The notes beneath the pieces are model-generated. The model was not told where the DNA came from. It did not search any database and saw only the letters and a program-made list of their open reading frames with translations. Positions 19,275 through 28,226 of a stretch of DNA of 64,000 bases are shown in pieces (the first letter of the stretch is position 1; each line of letters opens with the position of its first letter). Location of the stretch: the IMG/VR virus record IMGVR_UViG_3300050821_009835, positions 200,913-264,912 of that record; one strand, written 5' to 3'. The translations under genes and the position numbers were made by a program.

Positions 19275-21734
19275 ATGCCAAAACCAAAAGTCGTTCGTGC
19301 TACGAATCGCGACCGTGGTACTAATTTTACAGTAGGAGCTAAGAAGCAGCGTCGAGTTGTTGCTACCGGGTTAGATCCAACCACAGGCAAGAGCCGTGAA
19401 TTCGCTTCGGTTGGGCGCTATTCCAGCACAGACAGTAAAGGTCGCATTGTTGAAGATGTAGGCACTCGTAATCGGATGCGCAATATCAACCGGGCCGCGA
19501 ATGCTTTGGTGTTTGGCGGTGGGTTGGATAAAACAGCTGCTCTCTTTGGTGACTCAATGATGGGCGGGGCTGACATTGTTGATTCTCAGAACATCGGCTA
19601 TTACTCTTACGAGTTTCCTGTAGACGCTCTAGAATTACCACAATCCCGCGCTGAAGAACTCCGTTTCTACCGCCTAGCGTATGATCGTGATCCAATTGTC
19701 TCCCGCGCCATCAATATGCACGTTGAATTGCCTCTCTCTAAGATGACGCTGGAGAAGCCCAAATGCTCCTCCGAAGAATTCAAGGACTACATATTCGATT
19801 GGTATCAAGGTCTGATCAATGACAAGAAACTGTTTTCGGTCTTAATCGACGGTGCCCGTGAATTCTGGCTCCTTGGAGAATGTTTCTTTTATATTGAAGA
19901 GAAACAGAAGACTGAGCCTTGTCCCGTTGCTAAGAAACAAATAGACGAAGAGGAAAAGGGTGAAAGCTCCGACCCTGGAAAAGAGTCCGAATTTAACCCG
20001 CCAATGGGTGGGAGCGCGGGTGATCTAATGGATTGGATTGAACCCACCCGTAAAGCATCACTTATCAAAAAAGCAGCAGCGGTCATTGACACGATTAAGA
20101 AGGGTGGCCTTTCGTTCAATCCAGATGAATCACTCAAGGATGTCATCGCGGAGTTGAAAAAGAAAAAAGCAGCTCTTTTAAAGTTGCAGCGTAAGGTCGC
20201 CAAAGTTATCGGTCGCGTTAATCAGAAAGATGAATATCCGATCCAGGTCACTGCTGATATCTCAAAAATTGCAGAACCTCCAGTCCCCGGCGCGAACCCA
20301 GCCCCAGAACCTGGCAAACCCGGCGCGGACCCAAATGTAGAACCGGCTCCAGGTAGCGAAGGTGCCCCGCAAGGACCGGATGGGATGGCAGATGTGGATG
20401 TTCCAGGTGGTGGTGCAGGTGTGCCTCCAATGGGAGGTGGGGGAGGAGGGGCAGTTACACCAGCTGATCTAGGTGGAGAAGTCAAGGACGCTGTAGCTTT
20501 GGGTGTTAGCATCGACGAACAGCGCGAACTTATGGAGATGCGTCATTATCTTAAGTTGTTAGAGCGTAAGAAGCAACTGTTGGAAGAGTTGCAAGAACTC
20601 CGTGAAAAGCGCAAAGAAGAATTGGAACTTTTCTCCCACGTAACCAATCCAAACTACCGGGGCTTCTTCCGCATTCAGATCCTGCCTCCTGAGCAAATGG
20701 AGATGTCTAACGAGGGTACATTGGAGGATGGCCCTACCATCTATTACAAACCACCCGAAGCTCAAAAGGAACAATATCTCGAAAGCGAGAATACTCCAGC
20801 TGAAGTTAAGGATAAGATTCAGGAAGAGGGCAAGATCCCTTTGAATCAGGACCCGTTTAAGGGTTCTTATGTAATCCATTTTGCTCGTAAAAAAGCAAAC
20901 TATGAATTACACGGGCGTTCTATTGTCCAACCTGTTATCCGATCCTGCATATATCGCGAGAAACTGCGCCAAGTACAATCCACGATTGCTTCTCGTAACA
21001 TGACACCAAAAACGATGGTGACTGCGCCTGGTGTGCCATTGTCAGAAATCATGCAGTTGCGTGCTCATATTGATGAAGCGAAGGCTGACCCAGACTACAC
21101 GATCGTGGTGAATTACGATGCACAATGGAATGAGATTGGATCGGAAGCTCGTTTATTGGCACTGGATGGAGAATACCAACATACTAACTCTGATCTAGCT
21201 ATTGGATTGGGCTTATCCCCTGAAATTCTTATCGGGGAAGGTTTGTATAGCGGAAACCGTATTCAATTGGAAATTCTCAACACAGCATATCTGCAGTTCC
21301 GTGATTTGATTACGGGGATTGTGGAAGATCTGATCTTTAAGCCGTTGGCGATGAAGAAGGGATTTTATGAGATAGATAAATGGGGCAGGCCAAGATGGAT
21401 TTTTCCTAAGGTCACATTCTCCAGAATGGCACTTCGCGACTCTGGTGATTTATTCGACATGATGTTTAATCTTTACGCGAAGGGGTCCCTTCCAGTTTCA
21501 ATAATCTACGAATTTTTAAACATAGATTCTGAAGATTGCAAACGGAAATTGGAAGACGATTTGTTCACTGTAAACGATGCGAAATTCAGCGAACTTCTGT
21601 CAACATTGTATAGTTCAATGGCTGACTTGATCCTATCAAAATCTGATCTTTTAAAACGTGTTATAGAAGGCTTGACCCTGAATGAAGTGGACACAGACGA
21701 TCAAGGACCAGAAGGCAGCGGCGAGGGTATGTGA
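19275..21734 (+). CDS. Portal protein
   Basis: YRLAYDRDPIVSRAINMHVELP, VIHFARK...YELHGRSIV, and helical C-terminus typical of large-phage portals. Large internal low-complexity insertion. Confidence 0.75.
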   Translation: MPKPKVVRATNRDRGTNFTVGAKKQRRVVATGLDPTTGKSREFASVGRYSSTDSKGRIVEDVGTRNRMRNINRAANALVFGGGLDKTAALFGDSMMGGADIVDSQNIGYYSYEFPVDALELPQSRAEELRFYRLAYDRDPIVSRAINMHVELPLSKMTLEKPKCSSEEFKDYIFDWYQGLINDKKLFSVLIDGAREFWLLGECFFYIEEKQKTEPCPVAKKQIDEEEKGESSDPGKESEFNPPMGGSAGDLMDWIEPTRKASLIKKAAAVIDTIKKGGLSFNPDESLKDVIAELKKKKAALLKLQRKVAKVIGRVNQKDEYPIQVTADISKIAEPPVPGANPAPEPGKPGADPNVEPAPGSEGAPQGPDGMADVDVPGGGAGVPPMGGGGGGAVTPADLGGEVKDAVALGVSIDEQRELMEMRHYLKLLERKKQLLEELQELREKRKEELELFSHVTNPNYRGFFRIQILPPEQMEMSNEGTLEDGPTIYYKPPEAQKEQYLESENTPAEVKDKIQEEGKIPLNQDPFKGSYVIHFARKKANYELHGRSIVQPVIRSCIYREKLRQVQSTIASRNMTPKTMVTAPGVPLSEIMQLRAHIDEAKADPDYTIVVNYDAQWNEIGSEARLLALDGEYQHTNSDLAIGLGLSPEILIGEGLYSGNRIQLEILNTAYLQFRDLITGIVEDLIFKPLAMKKGFYEIDKWGRPRWIFPKVTFSRMALRDSGDLFDMMFNLYAKGSLPVSIIYEFLNIDSEDCKRKLEDDLFTVNDAKFSELLSTLYSSMADLILSKSDLLKRVIEGLTLNEVDTDDQGPEGSGEGM

Positions 21735-21742
21735 TCCCCGCG

Positions 21743-21781
21743 TTTTCTGACTTTCTAGGTATTAAGCAGAGGGTCAGAAAA
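21743..21781 (+). promoter_or_regulatory. Hairpin occluding the endonuclease translation start, with a promoter-like sequence in its loop
   Basis: TTTTCTGAC 21743-51 / GTCAGAAAA 21773-81 (last base is the A of ATG). Loop and flank carry GACTTTCTAGGTATTAAG. Confidence 0.5.
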
Positions 21782-22530
21782 TGTTCATCTATCTTATCGT
21801 CAACCATATCACCGGGAAATATTACGTTGGACAACACAAAGGCAAGAGTCTCCAGAAATACCTCGTAGCCAAATTCTGGGATGCCCGTCATCAGAGAAAC
21901 GGACGATCCTATCTCTACAACTCCATGAGAAAACATCCGGACCCTTCGGTCTGGTCCATTCACGCTCTCCTATCCGATATCCAAACCAAAACTGAACTAG
22001 ATAAGTATGAAAAAGAGTTCATCAAGTTTCTTCGTTCACGAGATCCTGAATACGGATACAATATCTGTAAAGGTGGAGAGGGTTTCACTGGTCCGGGGTT
22101 CAGGGGGCCACGTACTGAGGAGTGGAAGCAAAAGATAAGAAAGACCATGAAAGAACGCAACATAAAGCCCCGTTTACGCTGGTCTTCCTTAAAAGACATG
22201 ACTGGGCAAATTATAAATGGTATAGAGATCCTCAGAAGGCTAGAAAATAATAAAGAAGAAGATGCAATCTGGTTTTGCCAGTGTTTTTGTGGTAGAACTT
22301 TTACAGCTGTAGGGAGTTGTTTACGAAGCGGGCATACCCGAAGCTGCGGCTGTCTCAAAATCCAACAGAACGAACAGAACTTGAGTCATGGATCAGAAGC
22401 GGGTTTGAAAAAGATGCGAGATGACCCTCAAGAATTTTCCCGTAGGGTAAAAATGGGGATGAGACGTGCTAAAGCAGCAAGGGAGCGATCCAAACAAAAC
22501 TATCTTTCCCAATCACAGGGTGCTGCATGA
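21781..22530 (+). CDS. GIY-YIG homing endonuclease
   Basis: MFIYLIVNHITGKYYVGQH...YLYNSMRKH...GYNI..GGEG; NUMOD3-like RTEEWKQKI; WFCQCFCG...LRSGHTRSCGC. Confidence 0.9.
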   Translation: MFIYLIVNHITGKYYVGQHKGKSLQKYLVAKFWDARHQRNGRSYLYNSMRKHPDPSVWSIHALLSDIQTKTELDKYEKEFIKFLRSRDPEYGYNICKGGEGFTGPGFRGPRTEEWKQKIRKTMKERNIKPRLRWSSLKDMTGQIINGIEILRRLENNKEEDAIWFCQCFCGRTFTAVGSCLRSGHTRSCGCLKIQQNEQNLSHGSEAGLKKMRDDPQEFSRRVKMGMRRAKAARERSKQNYLSQSQGAA

Positions 22531-22652: not shown

Positions 22653-25600
22653 GTGATTACAGTACTTGACAACACCACATGGGCGCAAGCAGATTTGGAT
22701 GGAAATTCTGCTTTCATAGAAGTCATCGGTCCTGGCAGCCCACCTCAGGAATCCCTCTTTGTTGTTTCTAACAATCGTGCTGATAATTCCTTCATCATTC
22801 TTGAATCCTCCCTTGGAGCAGGTTCCCCTCCTGTGGAACTCTTAGGGAGTTCTTTTACAGTCGTAGCAGAGTATGTTTTTCCCTATGCTGCTGGCACCCC
22901 GCCATTTCCTAATCAAGAATTTGCCCCGTGTGTAGCTTATGATCCGATAGCAGGTGTGATTCATATTGTTGGTCTAAGAAACAATTTGACCAACCCGCGC
23001 TTTTTTGATTTTATCAAATTCCAGTACAACGTCGCAACAGGAGTCCTAACCGGGCCAACTGTGTTAGCAACAACTTCTCTTATCCGATCAGGCTACGACA
23101 TCATCGTATTAGGTAACAGCGACACTGTCATTGGTGTTATTCTAACGGATGCGACCACGATAGGCTCACCCCCAGAAATGCCGGGCCAGAGTTTAGTGAT
23201 TTTCGAGTTGGACCCAAATGACAATCTGGTTTCTGTTACTCAGTTGCTGAATTCTCCAGACAATTCGTCCAGTACTGCGTCCTTGATAACTTATAATTCT
23301 CTGTCATTGGCTTCTCCTGATGGCGTTAATGTAGAGTTATACTGGGAGCAACACCCGCGTTTGATTACGTTTAAAGATCAGCTGTTTCAGATTTTTTTCG
23401 CTCTACGTAGCGGCGGTGTTTGGAATCTCCCTGGGAATCCGATTGAATCCTTTGTTGGGCGTTATTCCGATGATCGTCTCACGGTTCTCCAAGATACACA
23501 AGGAGGACGTTACCTAGCACAAATATTTTATACGCAAACTAACATCCCAGAAGGTATCACTGGGAATTTGCTGCTCGGTTATTTGCAAGGCGGGGGATCT
23601 TGGATATTTCAAATTGTGAAGGGTTCGCTAAACGGTTCAATTGTAGAAGCTACTCTGTCTCTTGATCAAGCTGGTAATGTATTCGTTGCTTATTTGATAG
23701 AGGACCTTCTCACAGGTCAAGTGGGTGGTCCCACTTACCCGATGCAATTAGCATCGGTGAATCTGGCCAACCTCGCCGTAACTAATCTCCCTGGGTGGTA
23801 CAACAATCACAATTTTACTTGGCTTCGAGGCACTAAATCGATCGTTGACGATTTGTCCATGTGGGCTGTTGTGGCAGAAGAGCAAGTTGGTGGGAGTCCG
23901 ACTATTGATACCCCGAGCTATCTCTCGGGCATCCATACTCCTCCCGTGGCTGTATTGTCCCCAGCTTCAGTGGTCGTAGAACGTGGGACTCCACAATTCT
24001 TTGATGCTAGTGCATCCTACGATACTACCGAAGACCCGATTACTTACAATTGGTCAGAAACTAGCCCAGATTTGGTAGATGTAACTCTTGCACCCAATGG
24101 GGATACGGCCATTCTGAATGTCGCTCGCGCTATTGGTGGCGGGCAGCGCATTTTTGACGTTACAGTAGAAGAGACGACTTCTTATTACCCAACCCCCGAA
24201 AACGGATCTATAGCATCCTCACTGGTTACTGTCCCATTTGACCCGCCGTCTTATGTCGAGTTTCTGGGTCTTGCATTTTTGGGGTCTCCTCCGATACCAA
24301 CAATCTATGCCGCTAGAAATACAAGTGTTACAATTACACCAACGTATTTTCCAGAACCCCCGAATGCGGATGCCCTGATGTCCTACACTTGGACACAAAC
24401 GATGGGGGATATGGTTGAACCTTTGAGTTTTTCAACGCCGACTTTTACTTTCCCAACCAATGGGTTGTCGGTGAATGGGGAAACCCTGATGTTCACTGTT
24501 CAAGTCAATGATGGGGTTACAACCACATGGAGTTCTGCCACAAACTATTCTATTGGAGACTCAGCAATTTACAACAACGCTGTTTACACAGCTCAAGAAG
24601 CTAACACGAATGTTTTGCCTCCTAACTCTCCTACAGTTTGGTCGTTCATTGGTTTTAATCTAGCCACTGTTCAGGTGATTGTTGCCTCATACGAAGAACA
24701 GAATCCCTCGTATATCCCTAATACACTTCGATTAGCTCGTGCTATATGGCAAACTGGAGGTTCTCCGCCATCTAATGCTACTATCAGTCAACGTAACTCA
24801 CTGGTGCCCTCCTACAGTTCTTTAAGTGTCTCCGGGGTTTGGTCTAATTTACAGAATATCAAGCGTATTTCTGTCATTAGTGGGCAAAATCGGGAACTCA
24901 TTATTTCGCCTGCGTCAGCGTTGGTGTATGGTGGGGTAGCGCCGAATGTAGTACTGCTTACGCGCTGCCTAACGCCGCTAGGTACCCCAATTCTGGATGC
25001 TTTTCACACAGAACAAGATTACACTCTTGTATTGACGTTGGACGGGAATCCAGCAACATACAAAATCTATCGCTATATGACAGCCTACCATGTTGATACA
25101 GATAACCCGGACGCTTTTATAGATCTGTCAACTATCGTGCCAGAAATGGCCTTTAATACGATAACAGCTACAATTGTTTACAACAACGTTCGTGTTATTG
25201 CTTTATCTGGCCTAAATGGATGTTTGTTGCTTCAAGTAAACTCTCAAACTCTTACCCCTGAAGGTTTTACGGTGTTTTCTGTAGAGTCCAAAAGGCTCTA
25301 CGGTGCGGATAATGTTCAATGGGTTCGTATGGCGAATGTAGAAAGCGTCAATTCTGGTTTGATTCTAATCGGCAGCATTCAAATAGTAGGTAACCCACCT
25401 GTAAGCAGCACTTATGAAACGTTTTATGATCTCCCATCGGGAACTATTTTGGGTGTTTGGGACAAGACTAAATTAGTGAATCAAATTGTGAATACAGGTG
25501 AAATCCTCTTTGAGGCGATTTCTACGTATGGTGGTTTTCCTGCTACTCCTACTATGGGTGTTCCTACTCTTATTGATGGAGTGGTAACTCTATCTTGGTC

Positions 25601-25727
25601 TGAAGTAAACCCAAGTTCTATTGATGGATATGAGATCTTCTATTCAAGTGACGGCGTTTCGTATTCCAGCTTTCAAGTAGGCTCGGGAGCCATTCAGTCC
25701 ATTCAAATCCCATTGTCGCAACTATGA
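22653..25727 (+). CDS. Large virion protein (tail fibre/baseplate-like) with PKD/Ig-like, CBM5/12-like and truncated FN3 domains
   Basis: PPVAVL...FDASASYD...ITYNW (PKD); WSSATNYSIGDSAIYNNAVYTA...PPNSPTVW (chitin-binding-like); ends VTLSW...GYEIFY...IQIPLSQL, lacking the last two FN3 strands. Confidence 0.7.
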   Translation: MITVLDNTTWAQADLDGNSAFIEVIGPGSPPQESLFVVSNNRADNSFIILESSLGAGSPPVELLGSSFTVVAEYVFPYAAGTPPFPNQEFAPCVAYDPIAGVIHIVGLRNNLTNPRFFDFIKFQYNVATGVLTGPTVLATTSLIRSGYDIIVLGNSDTVIGVILTDATTIGSPPEMPGQSLVIFELDPNDNLVSVTQLLNSPDNSSSTASLITYNSLSLASPDGVNVELYWEQHPRLITFKDQLFQIFFALRSGGVWNLPGNPIESFVGRYSDDRLTVLQDTQGGRYLAQIFYTQTNIPEGITGNLLLGYLQGGGSWIFQIVKGSLNGSIVEATLSLDQAGNVFVAYLIEDLLTGQVGGPTYPMQLASVNLANLAVTNLPGWYNNHNFTWLRGTKSIVDDLSMWAVVAEEQVGGSPTIDTPSYLSGIHTPPVAVLSPASVVVERGTPQFFDASASYDTTEDPITYNWSETSPDLVDVTLAPNGDTAILNVARAIGGGQRIFDVTVEETTSYYPTPENGSIASSLVTVPFDPPSYVEFLGLAFLGSPPIPTIYAARNTSVTITPTYFPEPPNADALMSYTWTQTMGDMVEPLSFSTPTFTFPTNGLSVNGETLMFTVQVNDGVTTTWSSATNYSIGDSAIYNNAVYTAQEANTNVLPPNSPTVWSFIGFNLATVQVIVASYEEQNPSYIPNTLRLARAIWQTGGSPPSNATISQRNSLVPSYSSLSVSGVWSNLQNIKRISVISGQNRELIISPASALVYGGVAPNVVLLTRCLTPLGTPILDAFHTEQDYTLVLTLDGNPATYKIYRYMTAYHVDTDNPDAFIDLSTIVPEMAFNTITATIVYNNVRVIALSGLNGCLLLQVNSQTLTPEGFTVFSVESKRLYGADNVQWVRMANVESVNSGLILIGSIQIVGNPPVSSTYETFYDLPSGTILGVWDKTKLVNQIVNTGEILFEAISTYGGFPATPTMGVPTLIDGVVTLSWSEVNPSSIDGYEIFYSSDGVSYSSFQVGSGAIQSIQIPLSQL

Positions 25728-25812
25728 TTGTGGAAGTAATGTTACAATGTTAGACGGAAGTGAAGTACCGTCTCCATTGCTGGCAGTCATGTAAAATTGA
25801 AACAGAATCCCG
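25718..25812. other. 95-bp apparently inverted segment between TC/GA dinucleotides that swaps the C-termini of two convergent genes
   Basis: Flipping between TC 25716-17 and GA 25813-14 gives ...IQIPLSGILFQFYMTASNGDGTSLPSNIVTLLPQS* (complete FN3) on + and ...EAQQALSQL* on -. Confidence 0.6.
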
Positions 25813-26717
25813 GAGAGAGCCTGCTGAGCTTCGAGATGGCTTTGAGCGTAGTATATATTTGCTGGATTATACGCAATTTCTATGTACGACTCTGGAATTT
25901 CAAACGCATCACACCCGTTAGCCCGTGCAAATGGTAGAATTACTAATGGATCCGTGATTGTGTCAGGATTTTGCAGTTGTAGGAAATGATAGACATCGGG
26001 GTATGCTGCAAAAAGGCTTACCCAATCACCGCTGGATTGACCCTGTGTGTCTCCTCCACTAGCCGAGTCGTTTCCGATTCCTAAACCCGCGTTTGCAAAA
26101 ATTTGTCCTGTTCCATAGGTAATTGCATTTGAAATGCAATTGCTCACGTTGTAGCATATTTGTATAGAAGAATTTAGACTCTTTACGAATGCTGCAAGAT
26201 TGGTTAAATAAGCCTGTACCCCCGGTATTCCTCCCCAAGCCGAGGGATTATTTAAGTAGCATGGTGGGCAGGATAAATCCCCTTGAAAGGGGCCAACCCT
26301 GACATAAAGTACGTTGTTGGCATAGTTTGATGCTTCGAGATGAGTGATTAATGCTTGGATGAACGCTTCTTCTCTGGCAACAAAGAATGGAGATACAGTA
26401 ATGGGCAATGGTTGTGGGTAGGCAGGGCACGCTATGGAAGGCGTCCCGGATACTACATATGCTGGGGTTGCCGTATTAGGTCCTGGAGTCGGGGAGAGGC
26501 CAGAACTTCCCGCTAAAGTGACTATAATGGCAACATTTTTGCCTATACTGGTAAATGGAGCATTCATTGCATCGAGAGCTGACCAATTGTAAACTCCTTC
26601 GCTGGTTTCTATTTGCGCCCAGTTGATCCGGGTTGCAAATGTGGAGATATGTGGTACAATATATTCCCAGAATGCTGGAGTGTCCGGGTTGAAACTGCTT
26701 ACGATAGTCATGCCCAT
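25722..26717 (-). CDS. Clan-A glycoside hydrolase-like protein (GH42/GH35-like N-terminal pattern)
   Basis: RINWAQIETSEGVYNWSALD...GKNVAIIV...TPAYV; own RBS (AGGAAGAG); currently ends in an FN3 F/G-strand-like tail. Confidence 0.6.
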   Translation of the reverse strand: MGMTIVSSFNPDTPAFWEYIVPHISTFATRINWAQIETSEGVYNWSALDAMNAPFTSIGKNVAIIVTLAGSSGLSPTPGPNTATPAYVVSGTPSIACPAYPQPLPITVSPFFVAREEAFIQALITHLEASNYANNVLYVRVGPFQGDLSCPPCYLNNPSAWGGIPGVQAYLTNLAAFVKSLNSSIQICYNVSNCISNAITYGTGQIFANAGLGIGNDSASGGDTQGQSSGDWVSLFAAYPDVYHFLQLQNPDTITDPLVILPFARANGCDAFEIPESYIEIAYNPANIYYAQSHLEAQQALSGILFQFYMTASNGDGTSLPSNIVTLLPQS

Positions 26718-26771: not shown

Positions 26772-26945
26772 GTGAGTCTCTGTCCAGATTATTGCGATTG
26801 TCGCCAATGTAAACATGGTACCCCTGCATGCGAACCATGTAAAGACTGTCGTCAGGAAAGAGAAGTTGCCCAACATCAAATCGATCATCAGCATAGTGTA
26901 GAACGACAACGAGCAAGAATCAAGAAAGCGCCTTGGAGAGAATGA
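26772..26945 (+). CDS. 57-aa Cys-rich protein (not in ORF track)
   Basis: AAGGAGG RBS, GTG start, MSLCPDYCDCRQCKHGTPACEPCKDC... Confidence 0.6.
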   Translation: MSLCPDYCDCRQCKHGTPACEPCKDCRQEREVAQHQIDHQHSVERQRARIKKAPWRE

Positions 26946-26946
26946 A

Positions 26947-27960
26947 GTGCTCTTAAGTAAAAATGATCTCCTCAAAACTCTGCGTTCTCTCAGTGAATTT
27001 GATACTAACGCCAGCCCGTTTGTCGCCGTTCAGCTAGTGGAGAACAGTCTCCCACGCTTCTTTCGTTCCTCCATAAATGGCCAAATCATGTCCTCGGATT
27101 TTGATTTACTAAAAACAGGCAACACTTATGTTTCGCTGTCACATTTTAAGGATTGTCTCAAGGTACTACCAGAAGAGAAGATCGAATTATCACTGGATCC
27201 TAACGGTATTTTGAAGATTTCCTCCTTGGACAACACTTTTGACTCAGAGATTCGTGTGCACACAGTCCCGGTGACTCAGGCAGGTCTCAAAGCACATGAT
27301 TTGGGCGGCGTGGCAACCCGGCTTGGTGCGAATACATTCTTGGGTTGTGACACATCTCCTTTTGCGGCAGCCTCCCCGCCTATGCTGGTTAACGGGCGAC
27401 TCTTTATTTCCACTAAATTCGGCGCAGTAATGTGGAATGGTCCAGATTGGCTCCGCGCTGTTCAATTGCAGCCGCGTGAACCATTTCTAAAGCTGATCAC
27501 GGGAAATTCGGCTGTTGAAGATTTGTTTCTCACTGAGAAGGGTTATTGGGGAACGGCGATTGCGGGCATGGTCATTTTTAGTTACGGTCATCTGCTCGGT
27601 AGAGAACTTTTCGACGCCTATGCTGCCCCTGGTGTGGAGCTAACGCGGTTCCCAGCTGCTCGTCTTGTTCAAGCGTTGCACGCCGCAGCAGGACTTTGCG
27701 ATGATCAAGACAAAGTCGAGATTCGACCTAAAGAAGGCATTGTGGTGCGTGATAAATTCGGCAATGATTCTAGGTTTTCACTAGGCGGTAGTGATGGGTG
27801 GCAAAAATTTACGGCTTTTGGGAGAACGATGAAGACGATTGCCGATGCGCTTTCTCAAGCGGCGGATGAAGAAGCGGTATTACTGGATATACCCAGCTTT
27901 ACAAATCCGACCAAGCGACTTCAACGCGGACCATGGTCTGTGAGTTTTAAAACATTATGA
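26947..27960 (+). CDS. Putative sliding clamp (DnaN-like)
   Basis: 337 aa with three repeats of clamp-like alpha/beta spacing (SKNDLLKTL; VSLSHFKDCLKVLPEEKIEL; FPAARLVQAL; FGRTMKTIADAL...EEAVLL..P). Confidence 0.45.
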   Translation: MLLSKNDLLKTLRSLSEFDTNASPFVAVQLVENSLPRFFRSSINGQIMSSDFDLLKTGNTYVSLSHFKDCLKVLPEEKIELSLDPNGILKISSLDNTFDSEIRVHTVPVTQAGLKAHDLGGVATRLGANTFLGCDTSPFAAASPPMLVNGRLFISTKFGAVMWNGPDWLRAVQLQPREPFLKLITGNSAVEDLFLTEKGYWGTAIAGMVIFSYGHLLGRELFDAYAAPGVELTRFPAARLVQALHAAAGLCDDQDKVEIRPKEGIVVRDKFGNDSRFSLGGSDGWQKFTAFGRTMKTIADALSQAADEEAVLLDIPSFTNPTKRLQRGPWSVSFKTL

Positions 27961-28226
27961 TCGTTGCAATTATCTGCCCGAAATGCAAGGAAATGATCAC
28001 GGAAACTTATCCGCATCCGCTGAACATGCCGTGCTTCGTATGCCGAGAATGTAGGCTGATTCTCGAGCCGCCGAATGGGATGAGAGAAGAGATATCTACA
28101 ACACCCCTGGAAGGTGGAAGCATTCTTCCGTCTCGATTACCTTGGGATGATGGACGGGCCAGAGAAAAGAATTGGATAGGAAGTAAAGCATGGAAAGATT
28201 GGAAACACTCTCAATCTGCTAGATAG
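27957..28226 (+). CDS. Small Zn-ribbon protein
   Basis: CPKC...CFVCREC. Confidence 0.55.
   Translation: MIVAIICPKCKEMITETYPHPLNMPCFVCRECRLILEPPNGMREEISTTPLEGGSILPSRLPWDDGRAREKNWIGSKAWKDWKHSQSAR

What the first reader, a model, noticed from the sequence alone, without database searches (positions are those of the whole stretch)
25716..25814. 95-bp inversion splits an FN3 domain across two convergent genes, and both orientations stay in frame
Seen: the 1024-aa virion protein ends PATPTMGVPTLIDGVVTLSWSEVNPSSIDGYEIFY...SIQIPLSQL (FN3 strands A-E only). The opposite-strand glycosidase-like gene ends ...QQALSGILFQFYMTASNGDGTSLPSNIVTLLPQS (FN3 F-G pattern). Inverting 25718-25812 between a shared TC dinucleotide yields a complete FN3 on + and a tidy ...EAQQALSQL* end on -. 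There is no longer inverted repeat and no recombinase in the window. Options (inference): a switchable C-terminal swap; a fixed inversion that lets the enzyme dock on the virion by donor-strand complementation; or an amplification or assembly chimera.
Basis: partly seen in the sequence, partly recalled or inferred. Interest (0 to 1): 0.72.

Follow-up and report, generated by a model that had tools for sequence, protein, structure and literature searches.

The report
Small inversion splits a phage FN3 domain
In an uncultivated soil jumbo phage, a real 95-base inversion across the touching ends of two convergent genes moved the last two strands of an FN3 domain from a large surface-type protein onto a neighbouring glycosidase-like enzyme; it looks like a one-off mutation rather than a switch, but the two halves are predicted to fit back together.

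Summary
Flipping 25718..25812 gives the + protein a complete C-terminal FN3 and ends the - protein at ...ALSQL*. Homologues show that the flipped state is ancestral. 22 of 26 relatives of the 1024-aa protein end in the F-G strand motif. All five relatives of the 331-aa enzyme end 2-5 (in one case about 20, unrelated) residues after the ..AL motif. The enzyme's 29-aa tail matches the missing part of the FN3 family profile (positions 75-102, against 1-76 for the big protein).

The two closest relatives lack the enzyme gene. It therefore arrived in a ~1.2-kb insert, and the inversion followed or accompanied that.

The junctions stand in three assemblies, including an independent Logan contig at depth about 24. 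No inverted repeat flanks the segment that could confuse an assembler, so it is not an assembly artefact. There are also no flanking repeats for a recombinase, and no serine or tyrosine recombinase in the 265-kb record, so a programmed switch is unlikely. Staying in frame had a 1-in-3 chance.

A complex prediction rebuilds the FN3 from the two proteins (0.73 against 0.01 for the best control). Natural split-FN3 docking is therefore possible but unproven.

The parts
22653..25727 (+). Gene of the 1024-aa protein P0001. It has an N-terminal beta-propeller, PKD-like and CBM5/12-like modules, a second beta domain and a truncated C-terminal FN3. Its own sequence ends at S1022 (codon TC|G, 25716-25718); Q1023, L1024 and the stop come from the inverted segment.
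   Evidence: 26 homologues of 887-1779 aa on phage-sized contigs. AF2 mean pLDDT is 70.5. The propeller resembles GH145/PL42/sialidase propellers (TM by target about 0.6).
25539..25717 (+). The FN3 part left in P0001 (strands A to E, about residues 963-1022).
   Evidence: It matches family-profile positions 1-76 only (67.3 bits). There is no Pfam fn3 hit as it stands. pLDDT is about 50-55 in the AF2 model.
25718..25812 (.). The inverted segment: 95 bp at the least, 25716..25814 if the flanking TC/GA dinucleotides are counted. It holds 91 nt of the ancestral 3' end of the + gene and 4 nt further.
25722..25811 (-). FN3 strands F and G plus the old stop codon, now read as residues 303-331 and the stop of the - gene.
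   Evidence: Family-profile positions 75-102. 18/30 identities to the C-end of P0009, E 6e-10. It carries every nearly invariant F-G residue of the family (F, A, D, G, S). It is disordered in the AF2 model of P0002 (pLDDT below 50).
25813..26717 (-). The own body of the glycosidase-like TIM-barrel protein P0002 (residues 1-302). It has no signal peptide.
   Evidence: Homologues P0003-P0007 end just after the ..AL motif, and four of the five have N-terminal signal-like peptides.
26772..26945 (+). A 57-aa cysteine-rich ORF with a strong ribosome-binding site. Together with P0002 it fills the ~1.2-kb stretch that is absent from the two closest relatives.
   Evidence: and the synteny.
26947..27960 (+). 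The conserved 337-aa gene. In relatives it follows the big protein's gene directly, so it marks the right edge of the insert.
   Evidence: The window from 26966 on aligns to L003 8337-8670 at 75% identity.

Best explanation
This is a genuine, derived, unprogrammed DNA inversion. The ancestor of this soil jumbo phage had a large beta-propeller/PKD/CBM protein ending in a complete FN3 domain. A ~1.2-kb insert brought a glycosidase-like TIM-barrel gene in convergent orientation, with its 3' end abutting or overlapping the FN3 gene's stop codon. A 95-bp piece spanning both stop codons was then turned round by illegitimate recombination at a 2-bp microhomology (TC/GA). This may instead have happened within the same complex event as the insertion. 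Both breakpoints lie after the second base of a Ser codon, so each gene reads the other's tail in frame. The big protein loses FN3 strands F-G and gains Q-L-stop. The enzyme loses S-Q-L-stop and gains the 29-residue F-G hairpin as a floppy tail. The inverted form is the only one seen in the sampled population. Shown: the inversion, its polarity (derived), the insert, the lack of switch machinery, and the structural complementarity of the two halves. Inferred: the way it arose, and that it is most likely a recent, tolerated lesion of an accessory domain rather than an evolved device. If both proteins are made together, the halves may well reassociate.
For: Searches show that the tail belongs to the FN3 family and not to the enzyme family. 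22 of 26 relatives of the big protein end in the F-G motif, and P0001 is the only family member without it anywhere. One search shows the DNA homology to the closest relative running on the opposite strand as the window stands, and collinear when flipped. Searches show that the two closest relatives have the order big gene then 337/338-aa gene with 14-16 nt between, and no enzyme gene. Searches show identical junctions in three assemblies, with word depth about 24 in the Logan contig. Searches show no inverted repeat at the ends beyond 2 bp, and both breakpoints in phase 2. Searches show no Resolvase hit and no Phage_integrase hit over the cut-off in 264.9 kb. Searches show the tail disordered on the enzyme and the FN3 stub at low confidence on the big protein.
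Against: Only contigs, not raw reads, could be laid, and contigs drop minor variants, so a minority of flipped molecules cannot be excluded. The three assemblies probably rest on the same or sister samples and are not independent. The record is estimated 78% complete, so a recombinase could lie in the missing part. The FN3 end is conserved across the family, which argues that losing it should cost something. The tail shows no decay and all conserved F-G residues are intact, which fits either a very recent event or selection to keep it.
Confidence: 0.75

Rival explanations
1. Adaptive split-FN3 docking. The inversion is kept because the enzyme's F-G tail inserts into the big protein's incomplete FN3 (fragment or donor-strand complementation). 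This would tether a signal-less glycosidase-like enzyme to a surface or virion protein.
For: Complex prediction of P0001:940-1024 with P0002 scored 0.73, against 0.01 for the best of 3 controls; that mark was reached by 58 of 80 solved complexes and 2 of 110 mismatched pairs. Enzyme residues 304-327 touch the stub at the places where FN3 strands A, B and C lie, as FN3 topology requires. The stub's pLDDT rises from 46-49 with unrelated partners to 75. The enzyme has no signal peptide and no other anchoring module, unlike its relatives. High-affinity fragment complementation of an FN3 domain is on record by title (Dutta et al. 2005, Protein Sci 14:2838, as listed in the references of PMC11666773; the paper itself was not held). 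Both tails are in frame and undecayed.
Against: The pass is expected for any two halves of one domain, so it shows likeness and not use. Being in frame has a 1-in-3 chance. There is a single genome, no relative with the same arrangement, and no expression or virion data. That the big protein is in the virion is itself unproven.
Confidence: 0.2
2. Programmed, reversible inverton that switches the C-termini of both genes, as in Mu G, P1 C, shufflons or partial-intergenic invertons.
For: Inversions that exchange C-terminal parts of phage fibre genes are well known. Both orientations are open in both genes.
Against: There is no inverted repeat at the ends beyond TC/GA, whereas known invertons are bounded by inverted repeats recognised by site-specific recombinases (10.1101/2023.03.11.532203). 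No serine or tyrosine recombinase was found in the record. Only one orientation appears in every contig found. One 'phase' would merely break a domain instead of offering an alternative one.
Confidence: 0.04
3. Artefact of amplification, library preparation or assembly.
For: All assemblies seem to come from one soil project, and the junction words are held by one run only.
Against: De Bruijn assemblers cannot create junction words that are not in reads, and they invert a segment only between repeats at least as long as the word; none is present. The Logan contig, made by a different pipeline, is identical over 4.5 kb at depth about 24. Chimeric molecules would be rare and would not form the consensus.
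Confidence: 0.02

Closest known systems
Invertible tail-fibre segments of phages Mu (G/Gin) and P1 (C/Cin), shufflons, and 'partial intergenic' or intragenic invertons (10.1101/2023.03.11.532203)
   Same: A DNA inversion changes which C-terminal coding sequence is joined to a gene body. In phages it affects surface or adhesion proteins.
   Different: Those are bounded by inverted repeats, driven by a dedicated recombinase, reversible, and offer alternative complete modules. Here there is 2 bp of microhomology, no recombinase was found, only one orientation is seen, and the result is a split domain.
Donor-strand complementation of Ig-like pilins (chaperone-usher pili)
   Same: An Ig-like sandwich lacks C-terminal strand(s) in one polypeptide and could be completed by strand(s) from another polypeptide.
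   Different: In pili it is an evolved assembly system with one missing strand and a chaperone. Here two strands (F and G) were removed by a single mutation, and completion is only predicted.
Engineered FN3 fragment complementation (Dutta, Batori, Koide and Koide 2005; title seen)
   Same: Two fragments of one FN3 domain reassemble non-covalently.
   Different: That is a laboratory construct. This would be a natural case, with each fragment fused to a large protein.
Microhomology-bounded small inversions as structural variants (illegitimate recombination or template switching)
   Same: A short segment is inverted, with 2-bp microhomology and no recombinase sites.
   Different: It falls exactly on the overlapping ends of two convergent genes at equal codon phase, giving a reciprocal in-frame tail exchange.

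Membership tests
Programmed invertible segment / inverton | Inverted repeats at the two ends of the segment | tested here: not met
   Only TC/GA is shared. No repeat pair brackets 25717/25813.
Programmed invertible segment / inverton | Site-specific recombinase (serine invertase or tyrosine recombinase) encoded by the element or genome | tested here: not met
   PF00239 gave no match. PF00589 gave only a 13-bit fragment with two stops, below the cut-off, in the 264.9-kb record. The record is about 78% complete.
Programmed invertible segment / inverton | Both orientations coexist in a population | not testable with these tools
   Only contigs are served. Every contig has the same orientation. 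Minor variants would be dropped.
Fibronectin type III domain (PF00041) | One contiguous match to the whole seven-strand profile | tested here: met
   This holds for the flipped reading: positions 1-102 of the 105-position family profile, 89.7 bits. Homologue C-ends hit Pfam fn3 up to position 80-83 of 84, E 8.5e-5 to 2.7e-10. As the window stands, P0001 gives no fn3 hit. The flipped protein itself was not sent to Pfam.
Donor-strand / fragment complementation pair | One chain lacks terminal strands of the sandwich and another chain carries exactly those strands | tested here: met
   Profile positions 1-76 lie on P0001 and 75-102 on P0002; alignment A2.
Donor-strand / fragment complementation pair | The two chains form a complex | tested here: inconclusive
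   The prediction scored 0.73 against 0.01 for the best control; the mark was reached by 58 of 80 solved complexes and 2 of 110 mismatched pairs. This is a model's confidence, and it is expected for halves of one domain. There is no physical data.
Clan GH-A type glycoside hydrolase (GH35/GH42-like) for P0002 | (beta/alpha)8 barrel fold | tested here: met
   AF2 gave pLDDT 77.5 and pTM 0.79. Foldseek hit GH35, GH14 and GH10 barrels, E about 1e-8, TM 0.5-0.6.
Clan GH-A type glycoside hydrolase (GH35/GH42-like) for P0002 | Sequence-family membership over a curated threshold | tested here: not met
   Pfam Glyco_hydro_42 scored 10.8 bits against a cut-off of 21, E 0.31. The profile against PDB gave E 0.2 at best.
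Clan GH-A type glycoside hydrolase (GH35/GH42-like) for P0002 | Catalytic Glu pair at the ends of strands 4 and 7 | not tested
   The invariant E37 and E273 of alignment A1 were not placed on the barrel.
Phage virion (structural) protein for P0001 | Match to a known structural family, or proteomic evidence | tested here: not met
   No PHROG match. The only supports are position next to a portal-like gene and a surface-type domain make-up.

The most novel reading that the evidence does not exclude
A single 95-bp inversion created, in one step, a natural two-chain FN3. The big surface protein keeps strands A-E and the newly acquired, anchor-less glycosidase-like enzyme carries strands F-G, so the enzyme is non-covalently docked onto the phage protein by fragment complementation. 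This would be a one-mutation route from two unrelated neighbours to a specific protein complex.
Probability: 0.2. Interest if true: 0.8.

Novelty: new variant of a known kind. Interest (0 to 1): 0.5.

Why it matters
If the two halves do reassociate, this would be a natural example of how a trivial DNA rearrangement can turn two neighbouring genes into an obligate binding pair. It would also show how a phage might hang a freshly acquired enzyme onto an existing surface protein without evolving an adaptor. That bears on the origin of protein complexes, on phage depolymerase acquisition, and on the design of split-domain tags. If they do not reassociate, it is a clean, well-polarised example of a microhomology-bounded inversion caught in a wild phage population. 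It is also a caution for annotation: both ORFs look intact, yet one carries a broken domain and the other a foreign tail.

Tried and rejected
- No DNA-level relatives were found in the GenBank phage collection. IMG/VR held no relative of either protein by pattern scan.
- Pfam on the two pieces separately gave no fn3 hit. The split was shown instead with a profile built from 19 homologues.
- The scan of JGI metagenome contigs with the 24-mer left of the breakpoint found only the 340-kb contig with the same orientation. The flipped-junction 26-mer is absent from IMG/VR.
- A second run search with the 151-nt junction stretch listed only the probable source run, so there is no independent sample across the junction. 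The RNA run X2 and DNA run X3 hold identical pieces of both genes, but none spans the junction.
- The 95-bp segment has no second copy in the record, and there is no composition anomaly over the insert.
- PHROGs and the ESM Atlas gave nothing useful for P0001 or P0002.
- The two 1204-aa ORFs of the window are unrelated.
- The Dutta et al. 2005 paper could not be read.
- The flipped protein was not sent to Pfam or to structure prediction, because it is not a sequence of the window and would have had to be typed.

Full report
**What is there.** The window is bases 200913-264912 of a 264,912-bp IMG/VR virus record from a soil metagenome, with CheckV completeness 78%. The + gene 22653..25727 encodes a 1024-aa protein (P0001) ending ...SIQIPLSQL*. 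The - gene 25722..26717 encodes a 331-aa protein (P0002) ending ...EAQQALS followed by a 29-residue tail, GILFQF...LLPQS*. The genes converge and overlap by 6 bp. Flipping 25718..25812 gives a 1051-aa + protein and a 304-aa - protein ending ...EAQQALSQL*. Flipping 25716..25814 gives the identical sequence, because TC and GA flank the segment.

**Polarity: the flipped state is ancestral.**
- Enzyme family. Five homologues of P0002 (29-53% identity) all cover about 90% of it and stop just after the conserved ..AL motif (...ALQLP*...VLQLK*...ALALP*...VLQISCKV*). One has a longer, unrelated end, and none has the 29-aa tail.
- Big-protein family. 26 homologues of P0001 were found (36-66% identity over the C-terminal third). 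22 carry the FN3 F-G motif about 22 residues from their C-end, three carry it internally, and P0001 is the only family member without it anywhere. P0002 carries it 24 residues from its end.
- Family profile. A profile was built from the last ~105 residues of 19 homologues. It matches P0001 as it stands over positions 1-76 (67.3 bits), the P0002 tail over positions 75-102 (13.3 bits), and the flipped + protein over 1-102 in one piece (89.7 bits) (alignment).
- Direct comparisons. The tail aligns to the end of P0009 with 18/30 identities, E 6e-10. At the DNA level, window 25744-25772 matches the closest relative on the opposite strand, and the flipped window is collinear over 116 nt across the breakpoint.
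- Pfam. The homologues' C-ends hit fn3 up to profile position 80-83 of 84 (E 8.5e-5 to 2.7e-10). P0001 as it stands gives no fn3 hit.

**Context.**
- Synteny. In the two closest relatives, the big gene is followed after 14-16 nt by the 337/338-aa gene, which in the window starts at 26947. These relatives are L003 (an 82.8-kb contig, 66% identity) and L008 (a 26.9-kb contig). Neither has a minus-strand enzyme gene.
- The insert. The enzyme gene and a 57-aa Cys-rich + ORF (26772..26945) therefore form a ~1.2-kb insert peculiar to this phage. In the flipped state, the last codons of the enzyme (S-Q-L-stop) overlap the big gene's last codon and stop (TCATAG / CTATGA). The insert thus abutted the FN3 gene's end, and the inversion spans both stops.
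- The enzyme. P0002 folds as a (beta/alpha)8 barrel (pLDDT 77.5). The barrel ends in a helix at 290-302, and the tail is disordered (pLDDT below 50 from 304). The barrel resembles GH35, GH14 and GH10 enzymes (Foldseek E about 1e-8, TM 0.5-0.6). Sequence-level membership is not reached. Four of its five relatives have N-terminal signal-like peptides and P0002 has none.
- The big protein. P0001 is an N-terminal beta-propeller (similar to GH145/PL42/sialidase propellers), followed by PKD-like and CBM5/12-like modules, a second beta domain and the FN3 stub. The stub is modelled at pLDDT about 50-55. Upstream lie a homing endonuclease and a portal-like gene. 'Virion protein' is therefore a reasonable guess, not a finding.

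**Real or artefact.** The same junctions occur in three assemblies: the IMG/VR record, the JGI contig Ga0210388_10000011 (340,335 bp, 0 mismatches over 13.5 kb), and a Logan contig of 56,210 bp from run SRR7093796 (word depth 24.3, 0 differences over 4.5 kb). These probably share a sample, so they are not independent biological replicates, but they come from different assemblers. A graph assembler cannot invent junction words, and it inverts a segment only between inverted repeats at least one word long. Here the shared sequence is 2 bp. Chimeric molecules would not form a consensus at this depth. No contig with the flipped junction was found.

**Switch or accident.**
- Known invertons are bounded by inverted repeats recognised by site-specific recombinases (10.1101/2023.03.11.532203). 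No such repeats exist here.
- The record has no Resolvase-family hit and no Phage_integrase hit over the cut-off.
- One 'phase' would merely break a domain.
- Both breakpoints lie after the second base of a Ser codon. A reciprocal in-frame exchange needs only equal phases, which has probability 1/3.
- The best reading is therefore a one-off illegitimate inversion at 2-bp microhomology. It arose either after the insertion or as part of one complex insertion event.
- In the restored orientation, the left breakpoint sits in the loop of a perfect 6-bp palindrome (AATCCC, 7 nt, GGGATT). That might have favoured breakage or template switching, but such a match is not rare by chance (my estimate is about 0.1).

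**Consequence.** As the window stands, the big protein has an FN3 lacking strands F-G, and the enzyme has a floppy F-G hairpin. A complex prediction of P0001:940-1024 with full P0002 supports binding:
- The score was 0.73, against 0.01 for the best of 3 controls. That mark was reached by 58 of 80 solved complexes and 2 of 110 mismatched pairs. My own alignments were used, so these counts hold only roughly.
- The interface is enzyme residues 304-327 against stub residues at the places where, by my reading of the alignment, strands A, B and C lie. This is as FN3 topology demands (F beside C, G beside A).
- The stub's pLDDT is 75 with the enzyme, against 46-49 with unrelated partners.

This shows that the halves still fit. 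That is expected of two pieces of one domain, and it says nothing about use. High-affinity FN3 fragment complementation is on record by title (Dutta et al. 2005, listed in PMC11666773; the paper was not readable). I give about 0.2 to the reading that the pair is functionally docked and retained for that reason. I give about 0.75 to the plain reading: a recent, tolerated structural mutation, with or without incidental reassociation.

**Verdict.** The artefact and switch interpretations are disfavoured, the fixed inversion is supported, and docking is plausible but untested. It is a new variant of known kinds (C-terminal exchange by inversion; strand complementation of Ig-like folds), found in a single uncultivated genome.

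Noticed in passing
window 26772..26945 (+): A 57-aa ORF rich in Cys (CxxxCxCxxC...CxxCxxC pattern) with a strong AAAGGAGG ribosome-binding site. It is divergent from the enzyme gene and ends one base before the start codon of the 337-aa gene. It is absent from the two closest relatives, so it is part of the same ~1.2-kb insert.
   Followed up: partly
window 21781..22530 (+): Homing endonuclease (PHROG 314/374/7168, GIY-YIG/HNH type, E 6e-19) between the portal-like gene (19275..21734) and the big protein's gene. Relative L003 has a 254-aa gene at that place, plus a NUMOD3 endonuclease after its 338-aa gene that the window lacks. Relative L008 has neither. Mobile endonuclease genes come and go around this locus.
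   Followed up: partly
window 25705..25724 in the flipped reading: In the restored orientation the left breakpoint lies in the loop of a perfect 6-bp palindrome (AATCCC, 7 nt, GGGATT). As the window stands, this shows up as a direct repeat AATCCC at 25706 and 25806. It is a possible breakage or template-switch site, but weak statistically.
   Followed up: partly
P0002 against P0003-P0007 (alignment A1); L005: Four of the five relatives of the enzyme have N-terminal hydrophobic signal-like peptides, and the phage copy starts right at the barrel. One relative (P0004, 49% identity) lies in the same JGI sample (3300050821) on a 12.7-kb contig, beside an SLT lytic transglycosylase, a resolvase and DNA methylases. 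This could be a local donor pool.
   Followed up: no
window 23674-23829, 25274-25459, 26335-26686, 27837-28000: A soil metatranscriptome run (X2) holds contigs identical to pieces of both convergent genes and of the next gene. This may mean transcription or carried-over DNA. No piece spans the junction.
   Followed up: no
window 22653..23930 (P0001 residues 1-425): The N-terminal part of the big protein models as a multi-bladed beta-propeller resembling GH145 rhamnosidase, PL42 lyase and sialidase propellers (TM by target about 0.6). The big protein may therefore itself be a carbohydrate-active enzyme or binder.
   Followed up: partly
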